From Chlorokybus atmophyticus (lineage: Eukaryota > Plantae > Mesostigma and Chlorokybus algae), in contig RHPI01003511.1 in the NCBI GenBank assembly GCA_009103225.1, positions 53,087-117,086 on the forward strand: DNA of 64,000 bases. Direction: 5' to 3'. Both the position numbers and the translations under genes were made by a program. The notes beneath the pieces are model-generated. The model did no database searches and was not told the origin of the DNA. It saw nothing but the letters and a program-made list of their open reading frames with translations. This document shows, one piece after another, positions 1 to 58,326 of this stretch; position 1 is the first letter of the stretch, and every line of letters starts with the position of its first letter.

Positions 1-2824
1 AAGATTGAGCGACGGCATCAATGACGCATTTTAAACGTTCAGCAAGGATGGGATCGCAGATATACAAAGCATGCACAAGGATGTTAGATAATTTGAGCAA
101 CTACTTGCAGAGATATGTGTAGCAACGAGAGCACTTATTCAGGACTAACCAAAGCGTAGATAGGCTGCATCGGTTGCAAATTAGACACGACATTAAGGAG
201 ATACCATGTGTTCCATGGTTAAACAGGTAAGGTAAGTGAAGGAATGAAGCTTGGCTGCATTATGGTCACAAATCCTACAAGCACATCTCTTGTGTGTTTT
301 AGCATGCAAACCACTAAAAATAGGTCGCTGATGTTTTGCATAGGTGGTGGCTTAGCAGGCAGGGCCGTGTCAGTCTGATTGCGCGTGGCCGTAGGACCTC
401 GAACCTTGAAAGTGGACACAGATCCAATGACGGTATGAAGCGGACAATGGAGCGCAAGCACGCAATGCACAATAGGCCAGGGCGTGCGGCGACAACATCA
501 ATAGAGGTGTGGGTAATGTAGTCGTATGTGGTACGGGAGGGTGTGCGAGCGTGTAGTGGCAATTGTTTCATGTTAGTTCAATGTGGTGGGTAATAGCAAT
601 GGATAGACACAGCAGCGCATGTGTGTGCATTTGTAGATAGCAGGCATATAATCTCTCTATCCTCGCAAGGGTCGAGCGCTCATTAGCAACAGCCATCCCA
701 TGGACCCACACCATAGTTGCACCATACGGCTTCAAACCCCATTGCATACGCGTATATACGTGCATTACATAACCCATAATACATACTTATTACATGCGCG
801 TTTTTTAAGGCCTGTTGCTGTTGCAGGACAATGCCCTTGCCCCGAGTTCCATGCTGTTCTGCACCGCGCGTCACTAGACTGTGAATTAAAGGTGGCGCAC
901 GGTGCGCACTAGCCCTAAACTCGGGGCAGGGGCATTATTATGGCGGTGGGGTAATACGAAAAGGGTGGATTACCAATGGTTGTATAACATTGTGTGCACG
1001 TATTACTGCCGTATACAAGGACGGCCTGTAATGCATACACGTATATACTCGTATACGTGCACTGCGCTTACGATGCATGCCCGTATGGCATATGGTGCAA
1101 TTATGACCCACACATCACCATCGCAGTGCATAAATGCAAACTACAGGTGTTGTAGGTGGTGTTAAGAGTGTCAGCAATAGACCCTTGCCCAATGCTGACT
1201 TCTGCCGTATGGTTGTGGAGACCCTCAAGAGAGGATGCAATAACGAAGCAACATGATAATCAATAGCAAAAGAAGCCAATATACTAAGTTTCTGCCTCAA
1301 TGCGGATGGGCAACTACAGGCATGTGCTACTTAACCATGTTTTGGAGGCTAGGATTTGGGAACATGGCAGATTTTAAAAAGTTAAAAAAGCCAGGACCCA
1401 TAAACACAAGCAATCTCGTTGGGTTCGATACTATCTCTATAATATGCATGCATTGCTGCAAAAGCTTTGGTGACATGGCGCTTGTTCAACATGTACGGAG
1501 TACAAGCTTGCATGGTGTGTTTTGCGTACAATCTCAGTCACTTGTACTCTGGTTGCAAATCGTTGCTGTAACAAGAAGCAAGTGAGCTAGCACCATTAAA
1601 TTGGTAAGCGTAGTGTAGTTTCACATCAAGCATACATCCACTTAGTGTTAGGAATGGTCCCACTCCTTTGTTAGTTGAAGCTGAGGAGTAGTGCTGCATG
1701 ATCGTCACGGCTGCATGCAAATATATCAGCCAAGCGACCGATGTGTAGCGTAGTGCACGGTAATAGCATGATGTGCATGGGTTAAAGAAAGCCAAATGGA
1801 GCAAGGAAGACCAAAGCGCACCAAGGAGTGAGAGCTTGTGATGGTCGGCATTGGTCAGAGTGGGCCCCTTCAAGGCGTTCACAAGGTGGCAAGATGGTGA
1901 GTCACCACCTTATCACCTGATGAACATAGACATGGAGGTGATTGTGGTTTGCAGGCAGCGAGAGGATCTCTTGTCTTTTAATCATATAAAATTGAACGAA
2001 GAAACGTTATAAAGAAAAGAGTGTAAACTACCTATACATTGAGCTTGCAGAAGTGCTTGCGTAAATTAAACGCTGCATATTGCGATGACATTGCATCCTG
2101 CAAACTCCATCCATTGCTGCGTGTTTACCTTTAAATCTTGTAACTATGAATTGTTTTAACAACTTTCATACAGGTTCGATTGCTATTTGCGCTATTATGC
2201 TACACTTGAAGGCAGTAGTTACAATAGTTATAACGGCTAGTGTAGGTAGACCCCGGTGGTGAGTACTCATTGCATGATCATGAGCTTGGTGAACAAGGCA
2301 TGTGTCATGCATGTTGCATGTATCATGATCACTTGCATTTTTGATACACATCCACAACACGCGCACACCACTGTGACACACCTCGCCATGCCCGCAACAC
2401 TTCTTGCCGCGTCAGTTGGGGCTCAATCCCCAACCTTCCACTTGAAACGCAGCAGTCACTGCCGCACTAGTAGGGGCAACAACGAATTCTGACAACGCAC
2501 AATAGGAGAAGGTGCGGTTGTGCGGCACCAGCACCATGGATGTGGCGTGGGCAGCAAGTGGTGTCTGAGGGTGTGGGCAACAGTGTAACATGATCGGTGT
2601 AAGTATAAAGAATGCAATGCCATGATGGAGACAGTTTGTGCAACGTGGTTTGGGTACGTAGCGCGCGACTAGCAGTCATCTAATTCATCCAGGCTTAAGT
2701 GAACACCACCAACAACTAGCGCATGGACTAAGACACCATTGCATCAAATAGTGCAACCACAGCTGCTTGACAGCCGGGTAGAAATTGCCCACACAAAGGT
2801 ACCATTCAACTGTACAGTGCCTGC

Positions 2825-5800
2825 TTACAAAACTGTATTCACATGCAACGCCTTGAGCAACGCCAACGCCATCTGCTTGACCATGACCATCTCACCCTCA
2901 CGCTGCACAAGGCTGCGCAGGTTGGCGGCCAGATTCTGCTCAACCATCAGCTGCTTGGGTCGGGGGTGCTGCTCATAAACAACCTTGCATATCTTGAGCA
3001 ATGACACACGCGCAATGTTGTCACCGTCGCGAGCTGATTGCCTCAACTTCTCCACCAGCAACGGAGCCAGTCCACCAGTTGTGGACAGCGCCACATTGAT
3101 GCGCGTTGATTTGGTCACAATCTTCAAGAACGGGTCCAATATATGCACAAAGGCAGTGCCTTCTGCGGACCCAAACACAGCAACAAGCCGCGCAACAGCA
3201 TCCGGTTGCGCAAGGCGGGGTTCAACACGTCGCTGGTCGGCTGCCAGCCACACAGCCATGGCGTCCATTGCCACAACCTGCCAGTGTTCTTCCTGCAGCA
3301 GGTCCAGGAACAGGTCCAGTCCTCCATGCACCCAGAGTTCCGAACGTGTTGCGGGAGAGGCGTGTGCCATGTCGCACAAGAGGGGGAGAGCCAACCGTCG
3401 CATAGCTGCTTGACTGCCACCCACACCCACGCCAGCAACGATGGGCCGCAGGTGGCGGACGAGGCCTGCGGCTGCAGCAGCTTCTTGCCGCTCCCGGCTA
3501 ATCTTGCAAAGGTTGTAGACGGCGCGCAAAGCAGCCCCGCGAACTGTTGCCGTGGCCACCCCGGCGTGCATCTCCAGCAACGGAACAAGCCGGTGCATGG
3601 CCCCAGCTTCCTGAACAGCTTCAACAGCGGCCGGGTCTGTTGTAAGCTGCGCAATGCACCCAACCACACGCACGAGCACCGGTAACTCCAACGCCGGCAA
3701 CAGTGAAAACAGTCGCCCTAGCAGTGCCGGCTCGCATACTGCTCGCTTGACCGCAGAGTCCCCACCCGCAAATGCAGTCAGAAGCATAGCACACCGCCTT
3801 GCAACATCTGCCGCCGCGGCAGCGCTGGCTGCAGCAGCAGATGTGGCGCTGCCACTGCTGCGCGCGCGGTAGTGGCTGCCATACTGTCCTGCACCACCAG
3901 GGCTGCTGACCCCATTCCTACTCGACCCCGGACTTGCAGTGTAGTAGGATGATGCTGGTGCAACAGGTGGATGGAGCCGCTCGTCATTGGCAGCTTCAAG
4001 GATGCCAATGAGGCTGCTGAGGGCACCCGCGCGAGCAAGAAGGCGTAAATGGTCATTGACTGGTGTTGGGCCTGTGAGCCGCAGCACCCTCTCCAGCACG
4101 CCAACCGCCAGTGCAACAGCTTCACGGTGCTCCCGATAATCAACATTTAGCAGAACTGCCAGTGCTCGCAGGCCCCCACAAGCTATGACTACCTGCAAAG
4201 CACCGGCAGATGCACAGGTACACCTCGCCAGGAAGCGGGCAGCTTGCAGCCGGCATGCACTGCCGCTGCTAGTGTCCGATGTTCGTGCAAGCACTGCTGG
4301 CACCAAGCCACTCATGCACGCACGCTCCGGCAGTGGCGCCCCTTCCTCACCCAGCGCTGCATTGATTAACTGCAGTGCCGCAGTTGCCATTGCTTGCGAT
4401 GATGCTGGGTCCAGCAGTTCTGCAAGCACAACGGGCACCTGCGACTCCAGCAGTCGTGCCCTCAACCGAGGGTCCCTCTGCACCATGGCGCTGAGGGCTG
4501 CAAGCACAGCAGTACACTAGAGTTGGGTTCTGTTTTCGCTCAGCAGCATAAAAAGAAAGAGTTTGTATGCGCGCTACATACCAGAACATGCGGCTTGGAC
4601 CGCTGCCTCTTTGGTTAATTTGCCATTGCGCACGCTGAGCTTGCCCATCAACCTGCCTACATCCTGCAATGATTCTGCGAGGGTGTCCTCTCCATCCCCT
4701 TCATCCCGTGCTCTCGCCCATTCCTGCTCCACACCATTGTTGACATCAACACTCGAACAACAACATGTAAAAGAGAGCGACTGAAGCGCATGCAAGACAC
4801 ACCTGTTCACCATCCGTGAACTCTCCAACAACTTCCGTGCCCGGGAGCGATTGTGTGGTGGTTGTGGTGGAACTCTTCGCCAGCTCGCGCTCATCTGCAG
4901 CCGACAACTCCGTGCCTGGGCTGGAACGTTCCACACCCTTGCTAGCGCCATCTGGTGCACACGCGAGGTCGGCAATCAGCGTCTCCAATGTGCGGTTGGT
5001 AGCAGCTGCCTCAGCGAATGTGTCATCGCTGCGGCTGTGTGCACCCGCCACACTGGAGCCTGCATCGCTGCGGTCGTCGACTGTCGTTTCGCCATAATCA
5101 TGCCGCGTTAGATGCATGGACACCTGAGTGTGCGGCGCATAGGCAATCAGCACAAACAGTGACATGTTGAGTTGAAAGCCCAACTGGTGCAACACCGGCA
5201 ACCAGTGTAGTGAGATGAACTGCAACTCCTTTCATCAAAAGCAACCAAGAAGCCTTACTTGGCCAGATCGTGTACGCGGCATGAGTGGTGATGGTGAAGG
5301 TGGCTGGCTTCTAGCTGAAAGTCGTCCCATCCTGCCCTCACTGCCACCTCGTTCATGATATATGTAAGGTGACAACGGGCCCACGCCATCATCCAACTGC
5401 ACCACAAGTAGCAAAAGATACAGATTGAGGCAACAACAGTCTGGTTGGCTCGAGATTGTATACCATGCAGTACTCACAGGTGACGGTGGGCGTAGCGGGC
5501 GTGTTCCGGATGAGCGATTAAGAGTGCGTGAGTGAGTGGGTGGTTGTGCTCGTGCTCCTCGTTTGACCTCAACTATTCGAAACTCCCCGAGGGCGACGGG
5601 TGAGGGAGAGAGTGCACCTGGGCTGGGAAGAGGGCTGCCGCCTGTGTGATAAGGGGACGGCGAGGCAGAACGCGGTGGCAGTGTGGCAGACGTGGGCACC
5701 TCCTCCATAGCACGGTCCACAACATTGGCAACATCGGCGCTGAGAACCGCAGCAGCATGGCCTCGAGCAAGTGCACGAAGGTGGCCTTGCACCCACGGAT

Positions 5801-6605
5801 GCGCGAGCAACTCGGAAGCGGCAGGTCGGGCACGTGCGTCTTTGCGTAGACACTTCTCCAGGAAATCACGTAGTGAAGGTGAAACTGACTTGGGTGGTGC
5901 CGATGGAGCGAGTGCAGGCGGTGCGCCTCGCGTGCTTTTTCCTGTCAACAGCTCCAGCACCGCCAATCCAAGAGCGCGCACGTCCTCGCGTGCTGAAGCA
6001 GGAGCAGCAGTTGTGTCATTGGCAGCATGAAGAACACCAGCCAGGCCCCAGTCCGCAAGCTTCACAAGGCCGTCCTTAGTGGTGAGCAGGTTGGTAGCGC
6101 GCAGGGCGCCGTGTGCAACACCCTGAGCATGCAAGTACGCCAAACCCTCAAGTGCCTGAGAGACGTAGGCGGCGGTAAGGGACTCTGGAAGAGGTCCAAA
6201 GCGGCCTCCTGTGGCAGTGATGGCAGCGAGGGAGCCGTTGTCACAAAGTTCAGCAGCGACATAAATGTGCGAGCGTGTCCGGGCAAAGCCGAGGTAGCGA
6301 GCAACGTTGCGGTGGTTGAGAGCACGCAGGGCCTCGACCTCCAGCTGGACAGCTATGGCCGCCGCCTCCCCGCCGCCGCTGGGCAGAGCGGGGAGATCAA
6401 TCTGGCGAAGGGCCGCATGTTCCCTAGCCACGACATCCCAGCACTTGAACACCCGACCTACGACACCCCCACCGCTCCCGGACGGCGACGCTGACGACGA
6501 TCCGCCTGCGCCACCTCCGCCGCCGCCGCCGCCTGCTGCAGCCCCAGCATAGGCCGGTAATGGCTCAGCAGCCTGCCAGCGCTCCCCCACGGCGGACCCG
6601 ACCAT
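2825..6605 (-). CDS. MAP3K-epsilon (Cdc15/Cdc7-like) homolog: degenerate N-terminal kinase domain plus C-terminal ARM region; about 5 exons; probable pseudokinase
   Basis: Exon 1 (6605-5478) carries a kinase fold (GRVFKC, LNHRNVARYLG, ELCDNGSL, GLAYLHAQGVAH, VKLADWG, DFLEKCLRKDARARP, HPWV). The last exon ends VMVKQMALALLKALHVNTVL*, matching the recalled plant MAP3K-epsilon C-terminus. Approximate internal exons 5396-5259, ~5120-4803 and ~4723-4570 have GT/AG boundaries. Confidence 0.85.
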
Positions 6606-6744
6606 GCTGGCCTCCTCCTCCCGCCCAACCCGTCACCTCAACTCCCCTCCCCCGTCCTCCCCCTCCTCCGGCACCGCCATCGCCGACGGCAAGGATGCCA
6701 AGGATGCCGCCAACGCCAAGGACCACATTCTTGTGCAGAGTTGC

Positions 6745-6753
6745 AAACCCTAA
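6745..6753 (+). promoter_or_regulatory. Telo-box (AAACCCTAA) in the 196-bp divergent spacer
   Basis: Exact AAACCCTAA at 6745-6753; function inferred from plant telo-box knowledge. Confidence 0.4.
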
Positions 6754-6801
6754 TTGCGCTCAGCTGCTGCCACGTGGCAGTTGTTAGCGGCGGCGGTCAT
6801 C

Positions 6802-8250
6802 ATGGGCGGCTTAGCGGGGGCGGGGGCGGCCGTGTCGCTGTTGGGGTCGGTTGGGGCGCCACAGATGGTGAGGAAGCTGCGGCAGCAGCGTGCTCCAGCT
6901 GCCGCATCCAGGCTGACGCCGGCGGCGGGGTCAGCGTCGGCGTCGTCCTCCGCAGAGCCTGCCTCCGGGCCCGGGGTGTTGTTCGTGTGCTGGGGTAACA
7001 TCTGCCGGTCGCCTGCGGCGGAGGCGGTGTTCCTGGCGAAGGCGCGGGATGCTGGCTTGAAGGTGGGCGAGGGCAATGGGGCCCTGCGTGTGGACTCTTG
7101 CGGCACTGGCGGAGGCGACCGCGACTGGTACATGCCCAATGGCTACTCTTACCACGTTGGCGATCCCGCCGATGCTCGCATGATCAAGGTGCATGACCGC
7201 TGCTTGATGCACGCGTCCACCTCTCTGGTGTGCATGCATGATCAGTGCGAGACTGTTGAGTGTGTTGTTGCAGTTTGTTTTTATTCATGGTATGCTGAAT
7301 CTCTGTGAAGACCGCATTGCAGCTTTTTGCTATGCAGCATGACCGTGCTCGCTCGCGCCATCAGCTCCTCATTACAATTAAATGTGTAGGAAGGCACTGC
7401 CACTCCAGGGCGTAGGATGCCACCGTTGGGCAATGTTAGTCAAGCCACAAGATCCTTGGATGAACCATGTTGTCTGCAACCATTTGGTGTATGAGTAGTT
7501 GCTCAACACCGATGTCACTACACGGTGTCACTACACAGTGCAGGTGGTAGGCTCCATGGAAACTGCAGTGAGTTGTTGTTCAAGGCATGCCATCATATTC
7601 GCGCGTCCAGGATAGATGCATTGCGGAGTTTCAACACCTGCAGTTTATGTTACCTCTCTTGTTGTAGATTTGTTTTTGGGCTATTGATCATCGTACATGA
7701 CACTGACTCCCGTTAATGCAGGCAGCAGCACAACGTGACGTTGATGTATTGTCTCTCTCTCGACCACTGACGCCGGCAGACCTCTCAACATTTGACTACA
7801 TCATCGCCATGGATGCGAAAAACAAGGGTGAGTAGCCTGCTGTTAGATCTAGTTTTATATGAATCTGCTTCACTCAACACCTTTGCGGCTCACAACTTGC
7901 CTGTGGTCTCAGAGGCGATCTTAGAAGCAGCGCAGTATTGGAAAGGGCAGGGTAATCCTGTGCCTTCAGACTATGCCAGCCGTGTGCGGATGATGGTCGA
8001 CTACTGCCGAAACCACCCCAATGCAACACACGTCCCTGATCCTTACTTTGGTGGTCCTGATGGCTTTGAGAAGGTATGCAATAGGCCGATGTGGAATGGA
8101 GGTTGAGGATGTTGCAATAGTATAGTCTGCACGATGCTTGAAGCAGGTCTCTCAATACTCACCCAATCTCCATCACAGGTGTTGGATCTGCTTGATGACG
8201 CGTGCGGAGGGCTTCTTGATGAGGTGCTTGCTGCTTCACCAAGGTTATAG
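6802..8250 (+). CDS. Low-molecular-weight protein tyrosine phosphatase (LMW-PTP), 4 exons, Ala/Ser/Arg-rich N-terminal extension
   Basis: P-loop VLFVCWGNICRSPAAE and DSCGT in exon 6802-7188. SRPL..DL..FDYIIAMD in exon 7721-7827. VPDPYFGGPDGFEK in exon 7912-8073. VLDLLDDACGGLL...* in exon 8179-8250. Confidence 0.92.
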
Positions 8251-8814: not shown

Positions 8815-9192
8815 NNNNNNNNNNNNNNNNNNNNNNNNNNNNNNNNNNNNNNNNNNNNNNNNNNNNNNNNNNNNNNNNNNNNNNNNNNNNNNNNNNNNNN
8901 NNNNNNNNNNNNNNNNNNNNNNNNNNNNNNNNNNNNNNNNNNNNNNNNNNNNNNNNNNNNNNNNNNNNNNNNNNNNNNNNNNNNNNNNNNNNNNNNNNNN
9001 NNNNNNNNNNNNNNNNNNNNNNNNNNNNNNNNNNNNNNNNNNNNNNNNNNNNNNNNNNNNNNNNNNNNNNNNNNNNNNNNNNNNNNNNNNNNNNNNNNNN
9101 NNNNNNNNNNNNNNNNNNNNNNNNNNNNNNNNNNNNNNNNNNNNNNNNNNNNNNNNNNNNNNNNNNNNNNNNNNNNNNNNNNNNNNNNNNNN
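8815..9192. other. Assembly gap
   Basis: Run of N. Confidence 1.
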
Positions 9193-10615: not shown

Positions 10616-13382
<2,767 letters not shown>

Positions 13383-20021: not shown

Positions 20022-23000
20022 NNNNNNNNNNNNNNNNNNNNNNNNNNNNNNNNNNNNNNNNNNNNNNNNNNNNNNNNNNNNNNNNNNNNNNNNNNNNNNN
20101 NNNNNNNNNNNNNNNNNNNNNNNNNNNNNNNNNNNNNNNNNNNNNNNNNNNNNNNNNNNNNNNNNNNNNNNNNNNNNNNNNNNNNNNNNNNNNNNNNNNN
20201 NNNNNNNNNNNNNNNNTATATATATTCCTATTGCCTCTTTCAATTTTGTGTGTATGCGCGTGTGCACCCTTCGTGCGTGCCAGCCATGCCTGCGTGTCTG
20301 TGGCGCAGGGCGTGCATGTGCGTGTTGTGCACACGCGTATGCACATGCATTCAATCATGTGAACTAGGACAGTGTGCCTGAGTCGCACGCACAGCACTTC
20401 AACAATGTCATGTTGATATCACATGTACACTGTATACATGTGCGTTGGGATGCATACACACTGTGTGTCTACCGCATGCTAATCTCATGACTGGCGCCAC
20501 AGATGAGTTGATAGCGAGCCCGTGCGCGGCGGGATGCGAGGTGCGTGGGTACTGCAACCACGAGACGCGCGAGTGCGAGTGTCCGTACGGCTTCGGCGGC
20601 CCCACGTGCAACGAACCACTCTACCCCGCGTGCACCACACCCGACGGCTATGTAATATCCTGCAGGCAAGGCGATTCTGATGTATTTTGCGTGTGCGCGT
20701 GCGCGTGCGCGTGTGTGCACGCGCACATTCGCACCTTGCATGCACGTGCATGTGTGTGCGTGTGTTGCATCAGTGCAACAACAGCATTCGCTCTCCTGCA
20801 GTGGGCACGTTGGCGTGAAGCCTTGCGAGTGCCACCGTCAGTGTTTCGCGGCCAAGCGCGCTCGCCACGACCAGCAGCTTTGTTACGAGGAGCCCGACGG
20901 TAGCCCCACGCCCGCGGAGTTCATCGTGCCCAAACCGCTGGACCAGCTCGCCTTCTATGAGCGGTAGGAGAGTGATGATGATGATGATCATGCTGGTGTT
21001 GTGGTGAAGTTGGTGTGTAAATTGGCCCCTCCAATCAGGTTGTGGCCAGAGAAGGTGACCATTTCTGCCCCGCTCGTGCAGCAGCGCGGGTGGCTACACA
21101 TTGACGCGTGCAGGTAAGTGTTGTTGTCGCTGTTGTTGTATTGTTGAGCCTGTGCTCAATCATTTAACACTGTGTGACTGGAACACAGGAACAAGTGTTC
21201 TGGGCGGGGGATATGCCGGGCCCCAGGCGTGTGCCAATGCTTCGTTGGGTATGGGCACGCATCCATATTAGCAATGCATGATATGCCAAATGTATGGCAC
21301 AATGCTAATTGAAACCAGCACCAACACGTTACAACTCTGCAGCTTCGGTGGCGACACCTGCGAGTTCAGCCGACCCATCTATTGCCTCAACGCGTGCTCA
21401 TACAGAGGCAAGCAAACGTCACGCACGACAATATGCACTACCACTTCTCATGTACTCACACACACTGACATGCGCAAGCACATTCCCACACACCCGACAC
21501 AACATGCCCACACACCCACATCCGTAACTCCTCAGGCAGCTGCGAGTCCGGTTACTGCCACTGCGACCCCGGTTCGTACGGCATGGACTGTTCCCTCCCT
21601 CTCCCTCACCAGAACGTCACGCGCGAGGCCGTGACAAAAGCGTACGCGTACCCGCGCGTGTACGTGTACGAGCTCCCCGCACCGATGCTAACGTGGCACC
21701 TCGTCGAGGATGGCTGGAGAGGGGAGACAGTGTATCAAGTGAGTGGAATCATATACTCGGCGTGGAGGTTCATACTGGAGGGATTACTGCATTCACCCGC
21801 GAGAACAATGGACCCGGAAGAGGCAGACCTTTACTATGTGCCGGTAGGTTGGCGTGTGCAATACGTGTTGGGTTGTTGTTTCGTGTCGGTGCAGTTTGTG
21901 TTTGTGTTGCATAACAAGAGAAGGGTTTCAGTTCAAAAACTGTCTGTCATTGTGTTCAGGTGTTGGCGCACCCGATAGCGAGCAACGGTGAGCAGTTCCT
22001 TTGGCGACTTGAGGCTCTCCAGAAGTACCTCAGCGAGAAATATCCCTATTGGAACCGGTGAGACAGAGAGCTCTGTGTTATGAAACCATGGTGTGCATGT
22101 GCATTGGTGCACGTGCGCTTGGGTGTGCGTGGGGTGGGGGGGGTGGGGGGCGGGGGGGGCGGAGGGGAGGAGGCGACTGACTACCAATGTGTCCTCTCTT
22201 CAGCGCGAATGGTGCTGATCATGTGTGGATGCTCCCTGGCGACCTGTCTCCCTGCTTCGTGCAGCCATCCTTGTCCAATGTCATCATTCTGCACCATTTC
22301 GGCCGGATGGTCTCCGAAGACCGAGCCTCCCGCCACCTCGGCCACGCAACAAAGGTGGGTCACACATCCACATCCACACACACCGCACCGACACAACACG
22401 ACACACACAACACTCCTTCACAGGTCTGTCACGACGCACGCAAGGACGTGGTGGTACCCAACGCAATAGACGACCCGTTCGCATACGACTGCCTCTACCG
22501 CAAGCCGAAGCACTTGTGGCCCGAGCGCACGGTCACGTTGTACTTTGCTGGCGGGTTCAGGGACGAGGACCCAACATATTCGGACGGCGTGCGCCAGGAG
22601 CTGAAGAAGTTGTTTGTGAATAAAGAGGGGTATGTGATTGTCAATAGGGCGAACGACTATGTTCGCGGGTTCCAGACAAGCGTGTTCTGCGTGGCGCCAA
22701 CGGGGTGGGGATGGGGAGATAGACTCACACTTGCTATTGTCAACGGGTGCATACCCGTCATCATACAGGACCACACACGACAAGCCTTTGAAGGGTGAGT
22801 GGGCACGTTGTTGATGCTGTGTGCGTGTGCGTGTGTGTGAGGGTGTGTTGTTCTGTGTAGGTATCTGCCCTTCAGGAAGTTCTCCATCAGAGTGGCGAAG
22901 CAGGACATGGCGAAGCTGCCGGAAATCTTGGATGCTGTGGGCACGCGGCAGATTGAGCGCATGCAGCGGTGGCTTGAGAGCGTCTGGCGGTACTTTATCT

Positions 23001-33299: not shown

Positions 33300-33657
33300 N
33301 NNNNNNNNNNNNNNNNNNNNNNNNNNNNNNNNNNNNNNNNNNNNNNNNNNNNNNNNNNNNNNNNNNNNNNNNNNNNNNNNNNNNNNNNNNNNNNNNNNNN
33401 NNNNNNNNNNNNNNNNNNNNNNNNNNNNNNNNNNNNNNNNNNNNNNNNNNNNNNNNNNNNNNNNNNNNNNNNNNNNNNNNNNNNNNNNNNNNNNNNNNNN
33501 NNNNNNNNNNNNNNNNNNNNNNNNNNNNNNNNNNNNNNNNNNNNNNNNNNNNNNNNNNNNNNNNNNNNNNNNNNNNNNNNNNNNNNNNNNNNNNNNNNNN
33601 NNNNNNNNNNNNNNNNNNNNNNNNNNNNNNNNNNNNNNNNNNNNNNNNNNNNNNNNN
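33300..33657. other. Assembly gap
   Basis: Run of N. Confidence 1.
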
Positions 33658-58152: not shown

Positions 58153-58326
58153 NNNNNNNNNNNNNNNNNNNNNNNNNNNNNNNNNNNNNNNNNNNNNNNN
58201 NNNNNNNNNNNNNNNNNNNNNNNNNNNNNNNNNNNNNNNNNNNNNNNNNNNNNNNNNNNNNNNNNNNNNNNNNNNNNNNNNNNNNNNNNNNNNNNNNNNN
58301 NNNNNNNNNNNNNNNNNNNNNNNNNN
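58153..58326. other. Assembly gap
   Basis: Run of N. Confidence 1.

What the first reader, a model, noticed from the sequence alone, without database searches (positions are those of the whole stretch)
5478..6605. MAP3K-epsilon homolog has lost every catalytic motif but keeps an intact ORF and ARM tail
Seen in sequence: the beta-3 lysine motif VAIK reads AALR, the catalytic loop HRDIKGAN reads HGALRATN (no catalytic Asp), DFG reads DWG, and the whole GTPYWMAPE segment is deleted between DWG and subdomain IX. The C-terminal ~560-aa ARM exon still ends in the conserved KQMA..LLKALH.NT.L. Established: plant MAP3K-epsilon is related to Cdc15/Cdc7 of the MEN/SIN cytokinesis pathway. Inference: this is a pseudokinase scaffold or regulator paralog, and I know of no description of one in this family.
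Basis: partly seen in the sequence, partly recalled or inferred. Interest (0 to 1): 0.72.

Follow-up and report, generated by a model that had tools for sequence, protein, structure and literature searches.

The report
Dead-kinase MAP3K-epsilon paralog in Chlorokybus
An early-branching green alga (Chlorokybus) expresses and conserves a second copy of the cell-division kinase MAP3K-epsilon/Cdc15 whose kinase part can no longer catalyse but whose protein-binding armadillo tail is well preserved; this is the only catalytically dead member seen in this otherwise invariant family.

Summary
The stretch 5478-6605 (minus strand) is exon 1 of a spliced five-exon gene. It encodes 1133 aa and is identical to the JGI model Chrsp46S06092 of Chlorokybus.

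- **Motifs.** The kinase domain reads AALR, HGALRATN and DWG. It lacks the GTPYWMAPE segment and part of the alpha-G region. All 59 other family representatives with a near-full kinase domain keep these motifs.
- **Transcripts.** Contigs from two studies are colinear with exon 1, so no hidden exon restores APE.
- **Domain-specific divergence.** The kinase-domain end branch is 3.07 against a median of 0.14. The armadillo-tail branch is 0.53, equal to the median. The tail is 50-52% identical to land-plant MAP3K-epsilon.
- **Selection.** Against a related Chlorokybus strain, tail dN/dS is about 0.04. Exon 1 shows at most 71 differences where neutrality predicts 191.
- **Intact paralog.** A catalytically intact copy (Chrsp94S08315) exists in the same genome.

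The reading as a pseudokinase paralog is supported. "Every catalytic motif lost" overstates it: the Gly-loop, alpha-C Glu, catalytic-loop Asn and DFG Asp remain. A scaffold or regulator role is inferred, not tested. This is a new variant of a known kind, of moderate interest.

The parts
5478..6605 (-). Exon 1, CDS aa 1-376: Gly/Ser-rich N-terminus, pseudokinase domain, start of the linker
   Evidence: ORF. cDNA contigs are colinear over 5478-6601 or 6632 in X1, X2 and X3. Pfam Pkinase 3.8e-32.
5781..6473 (-). Pseudokinase domain, aa 45-275
   Evidence: Pfam aa 45-272. AlphaFold2 model pLDDT 83, pTM 0.81. Foldseek best matches are MST2/3/4, OSR1 and HPK1, TM about 0.7.
6405..6416 (-). AALR in place of VAIK (beta-3 Lys to Arg, aa 64-67)
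6090..6113 (-). HGALRATN in place of HRDIKGAN (catalytic Asp to Ala, Lys to Arg; His and Asn kept), aa 165-172
6045..6053 (-). DWG in place of DFG, aa 185-187
5985..6044 (-). Ala/Pro-rich remnant of the activation segment (aa 188-207); the P+1/APE part is deleted. Its length varies by +9 nt in related strains.
   Evidence: Alignment. Low pLDDT at model residues 151-170. In-frame 9-nt insertions at 5996 and 6002 in X3 and X4.
5397..5477 (-). Intron 1 (GT..AG)
5259..5396 (-). Exon 2 (linker)
5124..5258 (-). Intron 2 (GT..AG)
4803..5123 (-). Exon 3 (acidic, Ser-rich linker)
4724..4802 (-). Intron 3 (GT..AG)
4582..4723 (-). Exon 4 (linker)
4498..4581 (-). Intron 4 (GT..AG)
2825..4497 (-). Exon 5 coding part with stop codon: armadillo-repeat region and the conserved C-terminal tail (aa 577-1133)
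   Evidence: ORF. Family search: 904 hits, 152 at E<=1e-30. Streptophyte MAP3K epsilon hits. dN/dS 0.04 over the last 244 codons.
2749..2824 (-). 3' UTR as far as the transcript contigs reach
   Evidence: table 8

Best explanation
This is a real, transcribed and selectively maintained pseudokinase paralog of the MAP3K-epsilon/Cdc15/Cdc7 family (N-terminal STE-group kinase domain plus C-terminal armadillo repeats). It lies in Chlorokybus, in the sequenced strain now called C. melkonianii.

Shown:
- The gene is spliced from five exons into a 1133-aa protein.
- Its kinase fold is kept, but the phosphotransfer residues are replaced (beta-3 Lys to Arg, HRD Asp to Ala, catalytic-loop Lys to Arg).
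- The substrate-binding parts (P+1/APE segment, alpha-G region) are deleted.
- The armadillo tail is conserved as well as in any normal family member.
- An intact-kinase paralog exists elsewhere in the genome.

Inferred:
- After duplication the kinase domain went through a burst of change that removed catalysis. It then came under new constraint as a non-catalytic module.
- The protein now acts through binding. Its armadillo tail, including the streptophyte-typical C-terminal motif, would engage the family's usual partners. In Arabidopsis these include MOB1A/1B of the MEN/SIN/Hippo-like module.
- It would therefore scaffold, compete with or allosterically modulate the pathway run by the intact paralog. 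This would resemble the way ULK4 works with STK36, or STRAD with LKB1.
For: Gene structure and expression:
- Spliced contigs with four GT..AG introns appear in four runs from two studies. They are identical in X1 and X2 and 90-95% alike in X3 and X4.
- There is no intron or extra exon inside the kinase domain.
- My spliced model is identical to the database protein P0001, jgi Chlat1/6594 Chrsp46S06092.

Motif loss is unique:
- P0001 is the only one of 60 representatives with a near-full kinase domain that has lost the motifs.
- All 20 partial domains that cover the catalytic loop are also intact.

The fold is kept:
- Pfam Pkinase 108 bits.
- 62 of 101 family-conserved positions are kept. The losses cluster at catalytic and substrate-binding elements.
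- AlphaFold2 pLDDT 83; Foldseek matches STE20-group kinases.

Domain-specific acceleration:
- Kinase-domain identity to the family is 43-47%, where intact members share 60-86%.
- Armadillo C-part identity to land plants is 50-52%, comparable to Prasinoderma at 52-54%.
- End branches: 3.07 against a median of 0.14 for the kinase domain; 0.53, equal to the median, for the tail.

Selection:
- Last 244 codons against X3: 32 synonymous and 4 non-synonymous changes, dN/dS 0.04.
- Exon 1: at most 71 differences against 191 expected if neutral, P 1.5e-26, rough dN/dS 0.1.
- All listed indels inside the coding sequence are multiples of 3.
- Chlorokybus lineages diverged 24-76 Ma ago (PMC8611356).

Intact paralog: P0011, Chlat1/9058 Chrsp94S08315.

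Partner context: Arabidopsis MAP3K-epsilon 1/2 bind MOB1A/1B (PMC8910673). The ULK4 pseudokinase with armadillo repeats works with STK36.
Against: - There is no biochemical or cell-biological evidence of any kind.
- Codon-level dN/dS for the kinase domain alone could not be computed. Read laying listed only the first 40 differences, all in exon 5. The exon-1 estimate rests on totals and assumes the same dS.
- I could not see whether the related strains share AALR, HGA and DWG. Only the shared absence of the APE segment follows from the colinear alignment.
- The runs are labelled 'RNA? (a guess)'. Splicing shows they are RNA, but nothing is known about expression level or about the protein itself.
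- Beta-1 is replaced by Gly/Ser low complexity and Lys is replaced by Arg, so nucleotide binding is doubtful.
- The age of the duplication is unresolved. The tree groups the pseudokinase copy with chlorophytes, and the AU test rejects a sister relation of the two Chlorokybus copies at p 0.019. Its amino-acid composition is flagged as deviant.
- The interaction test was not run by the tool.
Confidence: 0.8

Rival explanations
1. Transcribed relic: a duplicated MAP3K-epsilon gene on its way to becoming a pseudogene. The kinase domain is decaying first and the protein has no function.
For: The kinase domain has an end branch 22 times the family median. It has two internal deletions and a low-complexity N-terminus. 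An intact paralog could cover the ancestral function. The gene is known from one genus only.
Against: The 1133-codon frame is intact, and indels in two diverged relatives are in frame. Tail dN/dS is 0.04. Exon 1 has about a third of the neutral number of differences. 62 of 101 conserved fold positions are kept and the fold is predicted with confidence. Splicing is correct in four runs.
Confidence: 0.07
2. Atypical but active enzyme: the domain still transfers phosphate, or does other chemistry, with relocated residues. WNK kinases and some 'pseudokinases' later shown to be active work this way.
For: The Gly-loop pattern, alpha-C Glu, catalytic-loop Asn and DFG Asp are kept, and Arg replaces Lys conservatively at two sites.
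Against: The catalytic base Asp is Ala. The P+1/APE segment and alpha-G, which hold protein substrates, are deleted. Beta-1 is missing from the model. No compensating acidic residue is evident in the catalytic loop HGALRATN.
Confidence: 0.05
3. Artefact of assembly or gene model: the degenerate motifs or the missing APE segment come from sequencing errors, or from a missed exon or intron.
For: The assembly has N-gaps nearby, at 8815-9192.
Against: Transcript contigs from two independent studies match the genome base for base across 5478-6601 with no gaps. Diverged relatives align colinearly, with only +9 and +3 nt.
Confidence: 0.01
4. Sole ortholog: Chlorokybus has only this copy, so the whole MEN/SIN-type kinase function was lost in the lineage.
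For: Word-based searches from P0001 found no second Chlorokybus protein.
Against: The exhaustive representative search returned P0011. The cluster look-up names it as Chlorokybus Chrsp94S08315, and all its motifs are intact.
Confidence: 0.02

Closest known systems
MAP3K-epsilon 1/2 of land plants (Arabidopsis, Brassica), with Cdc7 of S. pombe and Cdc15 of S. cerevisiae
   Same: The architecture is the same: an N-terminal STE-group kinase fold, an acidic/Ser-rich linker and C-terminal armadillo repeats. The armadillo C-part is 50-52% identical to Selaginella and Marchantia. The C-terminal motif matches the streptophyte consensus at 16 of 18 residues. The protein falls in the Viridiplantae clade of the family.
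   Different: The beta-3 Lys, HRD Asp and catalytic-loop Lys are replaced. DFG reads DWG. The APE segment and the alpha-G region are deleted. Kinase-domain identity is 43-47% instead of 60-86%. The Pfam kinase score is 108 bits, against 218 bits for the intact paralog even with its truncated model.
Chrsp94S08315 (P0011), the intact paralog in the same genome
   Same: Same family and architecture. The armadillo regions align over about 545 residues (E 5.6e-76).
   Different: Its kinase domain is 74-77% identical to land plants, with all motifs intact. Its armadillo C-part is less like land plants (42% against 52%) and its C-terminal motif is degenerate. The two copies are only about 40% identical in the tail.
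ULK4 (animals), paired with STK36/Fused; by my recollection also its plant homolog RUNKEL
   Same: A pseudokinase domain followed by armadillo/HEAT repeats, acting together with an active kinase of like architecture. The ULK4 pseudokinase domain contacts STK36 (10.1101/2020.06.18.159293; PMC10721220 abstract).
   Different: It belongs to a different kinase group (ULK, not STE) and arose independently. ULK4 keeps the catalytic Asp and an extended activation segment and binds ATP. Here the Asp and the activation segment are lost. The RUNKEL comparison rests on memory and was not found in the papers I read.
STRAD-alpha (STE20-group pseudokinase that activates LKB1 with the armadillo-like scaffold MO25)
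   Same: An STE-group pseudokinase that works by binding and allostery. Armadillo-type helical repeats take part in the complex (PMC2686265 abstract).
   Different: The repeat protein is a separate subunit, not a tail in cis. STRAD binds ATP. There is no homology beyond the kinase fold.

Membership tests
MAP3K-epsilon / Cdc15 / Cdc7 family (by descent) | N-terminal protein-kinase fold of the STE group | tested here: met
   Pfam Pkinase 5.8e-31. Best PDB sequence hits are MAP4K3, MAP3K2 and MST/STK24-26. AlphaFold2 model plus Foldseek give MST2/3/4, OSR1 and HPK1. The nearest full-length relatives of the kinase part are family members with the ARM tail.
MAP3K-epsilon / Cdc15 / Cdc7 family (by descent) | C-terminal armadillo-repeat region homologous to that of the family, ending in the conserved tail motif | tested here: met
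   HMMER against 1.84 billion representatives gave 152 hits at E<=1e-30. Those with an N-terminal domain are kinases of this family. Named hits are 'MAP3K epsilon protein kinase 1'. Tail motif.
MAP3K-epsilon / Cdc15 / Cdc7 family (by descent) | Placement inside the family tree with green-lineage members | tested here: met
   The Viridiplantae clade has support 100/98. The exact position within it is unstable.
MAP3K-epsilon / Cdc15 / Cdc7 family (as an active kinase) | Catalytic residues: VAIK Lys, HRD Asp, DFG, APE | tested here: not met
   AALR, HGALRATN, DWG, APE deleted. It is a member by descent but should not be annotated as a protein kinase or MAPKKK enzyme.
Pseudokinase (sequence definition) | Kinase fold lacking at least one of the beta-3 Lys, the HRD Asp and the DFG Asp | tested here: met
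   Two of the three are lost (Lys to Arg, Asp to Ala). The DFG Asp is kept.
Pseudokinase (functional definition) | No phosphotransfer activity; nucleotide-binding class | not testable with these tools
   Needs recombinant protein, a thermal-shift assay and a kinase assay.
Pseudokinase (functional definition) | Maintained by purifying selection rather than decaying | tested here: inconclusive
   Clear for the tail (dN/dS 0.04). For exon 1 it holds only from totals (at most 71 differences against 191 expected). A codon-level test of the kinase domain alone was not possible.
ULK4 / RUNKEL pseudokinase-armadillo family | Kinase-like domain of the ULK group | tested here: not met
   All nearest relatives of both halves are MAP3K-epsilon/Cdc15 family or STE-group kinases. 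It is analogous, not homologous beyond the folds.

The most novel reading that the evidence does not exclude
The two Chlorokybus paralogs have split the ancestral protein's jobs. The intact copy kept the kinase but let the C-terminal partner-binding tail drift: 42% identity to land plants, and a degenerate tail motif. The dead-kinase copy kept the ancestral tail (52% identity, 16 of 18 motif residues) and turned its kinase domain into a docking module. The pathway would then need both proteins as an obligate hetero-complex. That would be an independently evolved counterpart of ULK4-STK36 within the MEN/SIN/Hippo-type kinase family. It would also be a natural separation-of-function experiment for the kinase-independent role of the Cdc15/MAP3K-epsilon tail.
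Probability: 0.22. Interest if true: 0.65.

Novelty: new variant of a known kind. Interest (0 to 1): 0.45.

Why it matters
The Cdc15/Cdc7/MAP3K-epsilon kinases start the mitotic-exit, septation and Hippo-like cascade. Their catalytic motifs are invariant in every other member sampled here, from fungi, oomycetes and brown algae to land plants.

A naturally occurring, conserved dead-kinase member shows that the armadillo tail and the kinase fold can be kept for a non-catalytic job. It offers a ready-made separation-of-function allele for asking what the tail does. It also adds an independent case to the recurring pairing of a pseudokinase-plus-armadillo protein with an active kinase, as in ULK4 and STK36.

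On the practical side, the gene should not be counted as an active MAPKKK in kinome surveys of streptophyte algae. Its scope is narrow: one genus so far, no functional data, and an intact paralog that probably carries the canonical function.

Tried and rejected
- **Complex prediction** of the intact paralog's kinase domain with the pseudokinase domain. The tool did not fold the pair under a rule about pairing chains, so there is no verdict and no evidence either way.
- **Word-based homolog searches from P0001** did not show the second Chlorokybus copy. It surfaced only through the exhaustive representative search plus the cluster look-up. The earlier blank was a sensitivity limit, not absence.
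- **Third homolog search**, with the intact paralog's armadillo region, returned only itself and one Closterium protein. It did not help to date the duplication.
- **Long family members without a kinase hit** (P0063, P0101, P0123, P0117, P0024). Most come from metagenome or Logan contigs, and the five inspected begin in the post-kinase linker. I read them as ORF calls that miss upstream exons, not as kinase-less or pseudokinase relatives.
- **dN/dS for the kinase domain alone** was not possible. Read laying prints 40 of 327 differences and is capped at one call.
- **Relatives' proteins.** The protein database holds no proteins from the related Chlorokybus transcriptomes; the P0001 cluster has one member.
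- **Earlier scan notes** gave no note of an intact MAP3K-epsilon.
- **Rejected readings:** a hidden intron or exon supplying APE, an assembly error, and a sole ortholog.
- **Handling of the spliced model.** Searches were sent exon by exon by reference. The exons were joined only inside a sandbox script, to check identity with the database protein P0001. After that P0001 was used by its id. No typed joined sequence was sent to any tool.
Full report
**What is at the coordinates**

The region 5478-6605 is an open frame on the minus strand. It starts at the ATG at 6605 and ends at a GTGAGT splice donor. Pfam finds a protein kinase domain at aa 45-272 (3.8e-32). The best solved-structure relatives are STE-group kinases: MAP4K3, MAP3K2 and MST/STK24-26. 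Those alignments show directly that HRDIKGAN is HGALRATN and DFG is DWG. The ORF 4507-2825 downstream on the same strand carries armadillo repeats.

**Gene structure and expression**

The look-up of sequencing runs found four runs of 'organism A' from two studies that hold the stretch. Laid on 2400-6900, their contigs skip four segments. After the cut offsets given by the tool, all four are canonical GT..AG introns on the minus strand: 5477-5397, 5258-5124, 4802-4724 and 4581-4498. Contigs lacking introns can only come from RNA, so the gene is transcribed and spliced.

X1 and X2 match the window with no differences. X3 and X4 are 90-95% alike.

The contigs are colinear with the genome across the whole of exon 1. 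No hidden intron or skipped exon supplies the missing APE segment.

The exons add up to 3399 coding bases, or 1133 codons. A script-level join is identical to database protein P0001. The cluster look-up names P0001 as Chlorokybus atmophyticus, jgi Chlat1/6594, Chrsp46S06092. According to PMC8611356 the sequenced strain CCAC 0220 is now C. melkonianii. That paper dates the deepest split in the genus at about 76 Ma (54-102) and the atmophyticus/melkonianii split at 24 Ma. X3 and X4 are probably other cryptic species from that study. This is an inference, because run ids are coded.

**The motif loss is unique in the family**

I searched the armadillo exon with HMMER against 1.84 billion representatives. 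This gave 904 hits, 152 of them at E<=1e-30. I aligned the kinase domains of the best 150 to a family profile.

- Among the 60 with a near-full domain, 59 have VA[IVLM]K-type beta-3, HRD[IV]K..N, DFG, the ..WMAPE segment and D[IV]WS[VL]G. Only P0001 reads AALR, HGALRATN, DWG, no APE, and DVRALG.
- The 20 partial domains that cover the catalytic loop are all canonical too.

A 30-sequence alignment adds three points:
- About 19 residues are missing between DWG and subdomain IX.
- A second deletion of about 13 residues removes most of alpha-G.
- Beta-1 is replaced by Gly/Ser low complexity.

Several catalytic-site elements are retained: GxGxxGxV (GGGVVGRV), the alpha-C Glu, the HRD His, the catalytic-loop Asn, the DFG Asp, the subdomain IX Asp and the subdomain XI Arg. 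So 'every catalytic motif lost' is too strong.

Of 101 positions conserved in at least 93% of the 29 intact sequences, P0001 keeps 62, substitutes 28 (many conservatively) and deletes 11. The losses cluster at the catalytic and substrate-binding elements.

An AlphaFold2 model of aa 36-300 is confident (pLDDT 83, pTM 0.81). Only the N-terminus and the activation-loop remnant are disordered. It matches MST2/3/4, OSR1 and HPK1 at TM about 0.7.

**Only the kinase domain has diverged**

In this family the kinase domain is normally the best-conserved part, at 60-86% identity between plants, green algae, oomycetes and fungi. The armadillo C-part is less conserved, at 27-67%. In P0001 the order is reversed:

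| Region | P0001 | Comparison |
|---|---|---|
| Kinase domain identity to any member | 43-47% | 60-86% among intact members |
| Armadillo C-part identity to Selaginella/Marchantia | 50-52% | Prasinoderma 52-54%; chlorophytes 31-35% |
| Kinase-domain end branch (changes per site) | 3.07 | median 0.14 |
| Armadillo C-part end branch | 0.53 | median 0.53 |

The branch lengths come from maximum-likelihood trees.

**Selection**

Read laying listed what appear to be the first 40 differences of relative X3 by position. All lie in the 3' UTR and the last 244 codons. Of the 36 coding changes, 32 are synonymous and 4 non-synonymous. This gives dS 0.19 and dN/dS 0.04.

For exon 1 only totals are available. 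There are at most 71 differences in 1155 aligned bases. If all sites changed at the synonymous rate, 191 would be expected (P 1.5e-26). Assuming the same dS, dN/dS comes to about 0.1.

The indels listed for the relatives within the coding sequence are in frame. There are 9-nt insertions at 5996 and 6002, in the Ala/Pro-rich remnant of the activation loop, and a 3-nt insertion at 6203. Because these are the only length differences there, the relatives also lack the APE segment. The deletion therefore predates their split.

I could not see whether they share the point substitutions. I also could not compute a codon-level ratio for the kinase domain alone.

**An intact paralog exists**

Among the representatives, P0011 (1049 aa) matched the armadillo exon at E 5.6e-76. 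It is Chlorokybus Chlat1/9058, Chrsp94S08315. It has GRGAYGKV, VAIK, HRDIKGAN, DFG, GSPYWMAPE and DIWGVG. Its kinase domain is 74-77% identical to land plants. Its model lacks about 25 residues between alpha-G and alpha-H, probably because of a missed exon.

The armadillo C-part of the intact copy is less like land plants than that of the dead-kinase copy (42% against 52%). Its C-terminal motif is degenerate, while the dead-kinase copy matches the streptophyte consensus at 16 of 18 residues. The armadillo N-part shows the opposite pattern: 40% for the intact copy against 28-30%.

In a 28-sequence tree of the armadillo region, both copies lie near the base of the green lineage. The pseudokinase copy groups with chlorophytes (99/95). 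Forcing the two copies together costs 11 log-likelihood units (p-AU 0.019). The pseudokinase copy's composition is flagged as deviant, so I treat the age of the duplication as unresolved.

**How it most likely works**

Shown: catalysis-critical residues and substrate-holding segments are gone, the fold and the tail are conserved, the gene is expressed, and an intact paralog exists.

Inferred: the protein acts by binding. Arabidopsis MAP3K-epsilon 1/2 bind MOB1A/1B of the Hippo/MEN/SIN-like module (PMC8910673). From memory, yeast Cdc15 and Cdc7 use their non-kinase parts for localisation and for GTPase and scaffold binding. The best-supported model is therefore a scaffold, competitor or allosteric partner in the pathway run by Chrsp94S08315.

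The ULK4 pseudokinase with armadillo repeats, whose pseudokinase domain contacts the active kinase STK36, is the closest functional precedent. It belongs to another kinase group.

Nucleotide binding is uncertain. The Gly-loop pattern, the Asn and the DFG Asp remain, but beta-1 is missing and Lys is Arg.

A complex prediction of the two kinase domains was not run by the tool.

**Novelty**

The paper library gave no hit for the gene id, for 'MAP3K epsilon' together with pseudokinase, or for a Cdc15-type pseudokinase. The library does not cover most subscription journals.

Another first-stage note of this scan (s1-079617) made the same observation on an overlapping window.

I rate this a new variant of a known kind: a pseudokinase derivative of a well-known kinase family, so far restricted to one genus. 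It is of moderate interest.

Searches of the spliced model were sent exon by exon by reference. The joined form was built only in a script, to compare it with P0001, and from then on P0001 was used by its id.

Noticed in passing
window 6654-7308 (+): The divergent neighbour is a low-molecular-weight phosphotyrosine phosphatase gene (Pfam LMWPc 2e-10, with the CX5R motif region). Its transcript contig starts at 6654, while the pseudokinase transcript reaches at least 6632. The two genes are head to head, with roughly 20-50 bp between the transcript ends, so they presumably share a bidirectional promoter.
   Followed up: partly
window 11480-12322 (+): A long exon encodes armadillo/HEAT repeats (Arm 1.2e-17). 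It belongs to another armadillo-repeat gene about 5 kb away and is unrelated to the finding by sequence. Its identity was not pursued.
   Followed up: no
window 8815-9192, 20022-20216, 33300-33657, 58153-58326: Four assembly gaps (runs of N) explain the low-GC bins in the composition profile. None touches the gene studied.
   Followed up: yes
window 2825-6605 (-): The gene has two very long exons (1128 and 1673 nt), and all four introns sit in the linker. The whole kinase domain and the whole armadillo region are intron-free. This looks unusual beside the intron-rich Chlorokybus genes described in other scan notes. It may point to intron loss or a cDNA-mediated origin of this copy.
   Followed up: no
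P0011 (Chrsp94S08315), aa about 230-245: The JGI model of the intact paralog lacks about 25 conserved residues between alpha-G and alpha-H of the kinase domain. This is probably a missed small exon, so the reference annotation of that gene needs repair.
   Followed up: partly
window 4486-4582 and 4726-4860 (relative X4): In the most diverged relative the linker exons differ. One joint carries 11 other letters and another 54 replaced letters. The linker region therefore evolves by indel or replacement, or uses other splice sites, while both domains stay colinear.
   Followed up: no
P0063, P0101, P0123, P0117, P0024 (family hits from metagenomes and Logan): These are long ORFs with the family's armadillo tail but no kinase domain. 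The five inspected begin in the post-kinase linker, so they look like single-ORF calls on intron-containing eukaryotic contigs rather than kinase-less proteins.
   Followed up: partly
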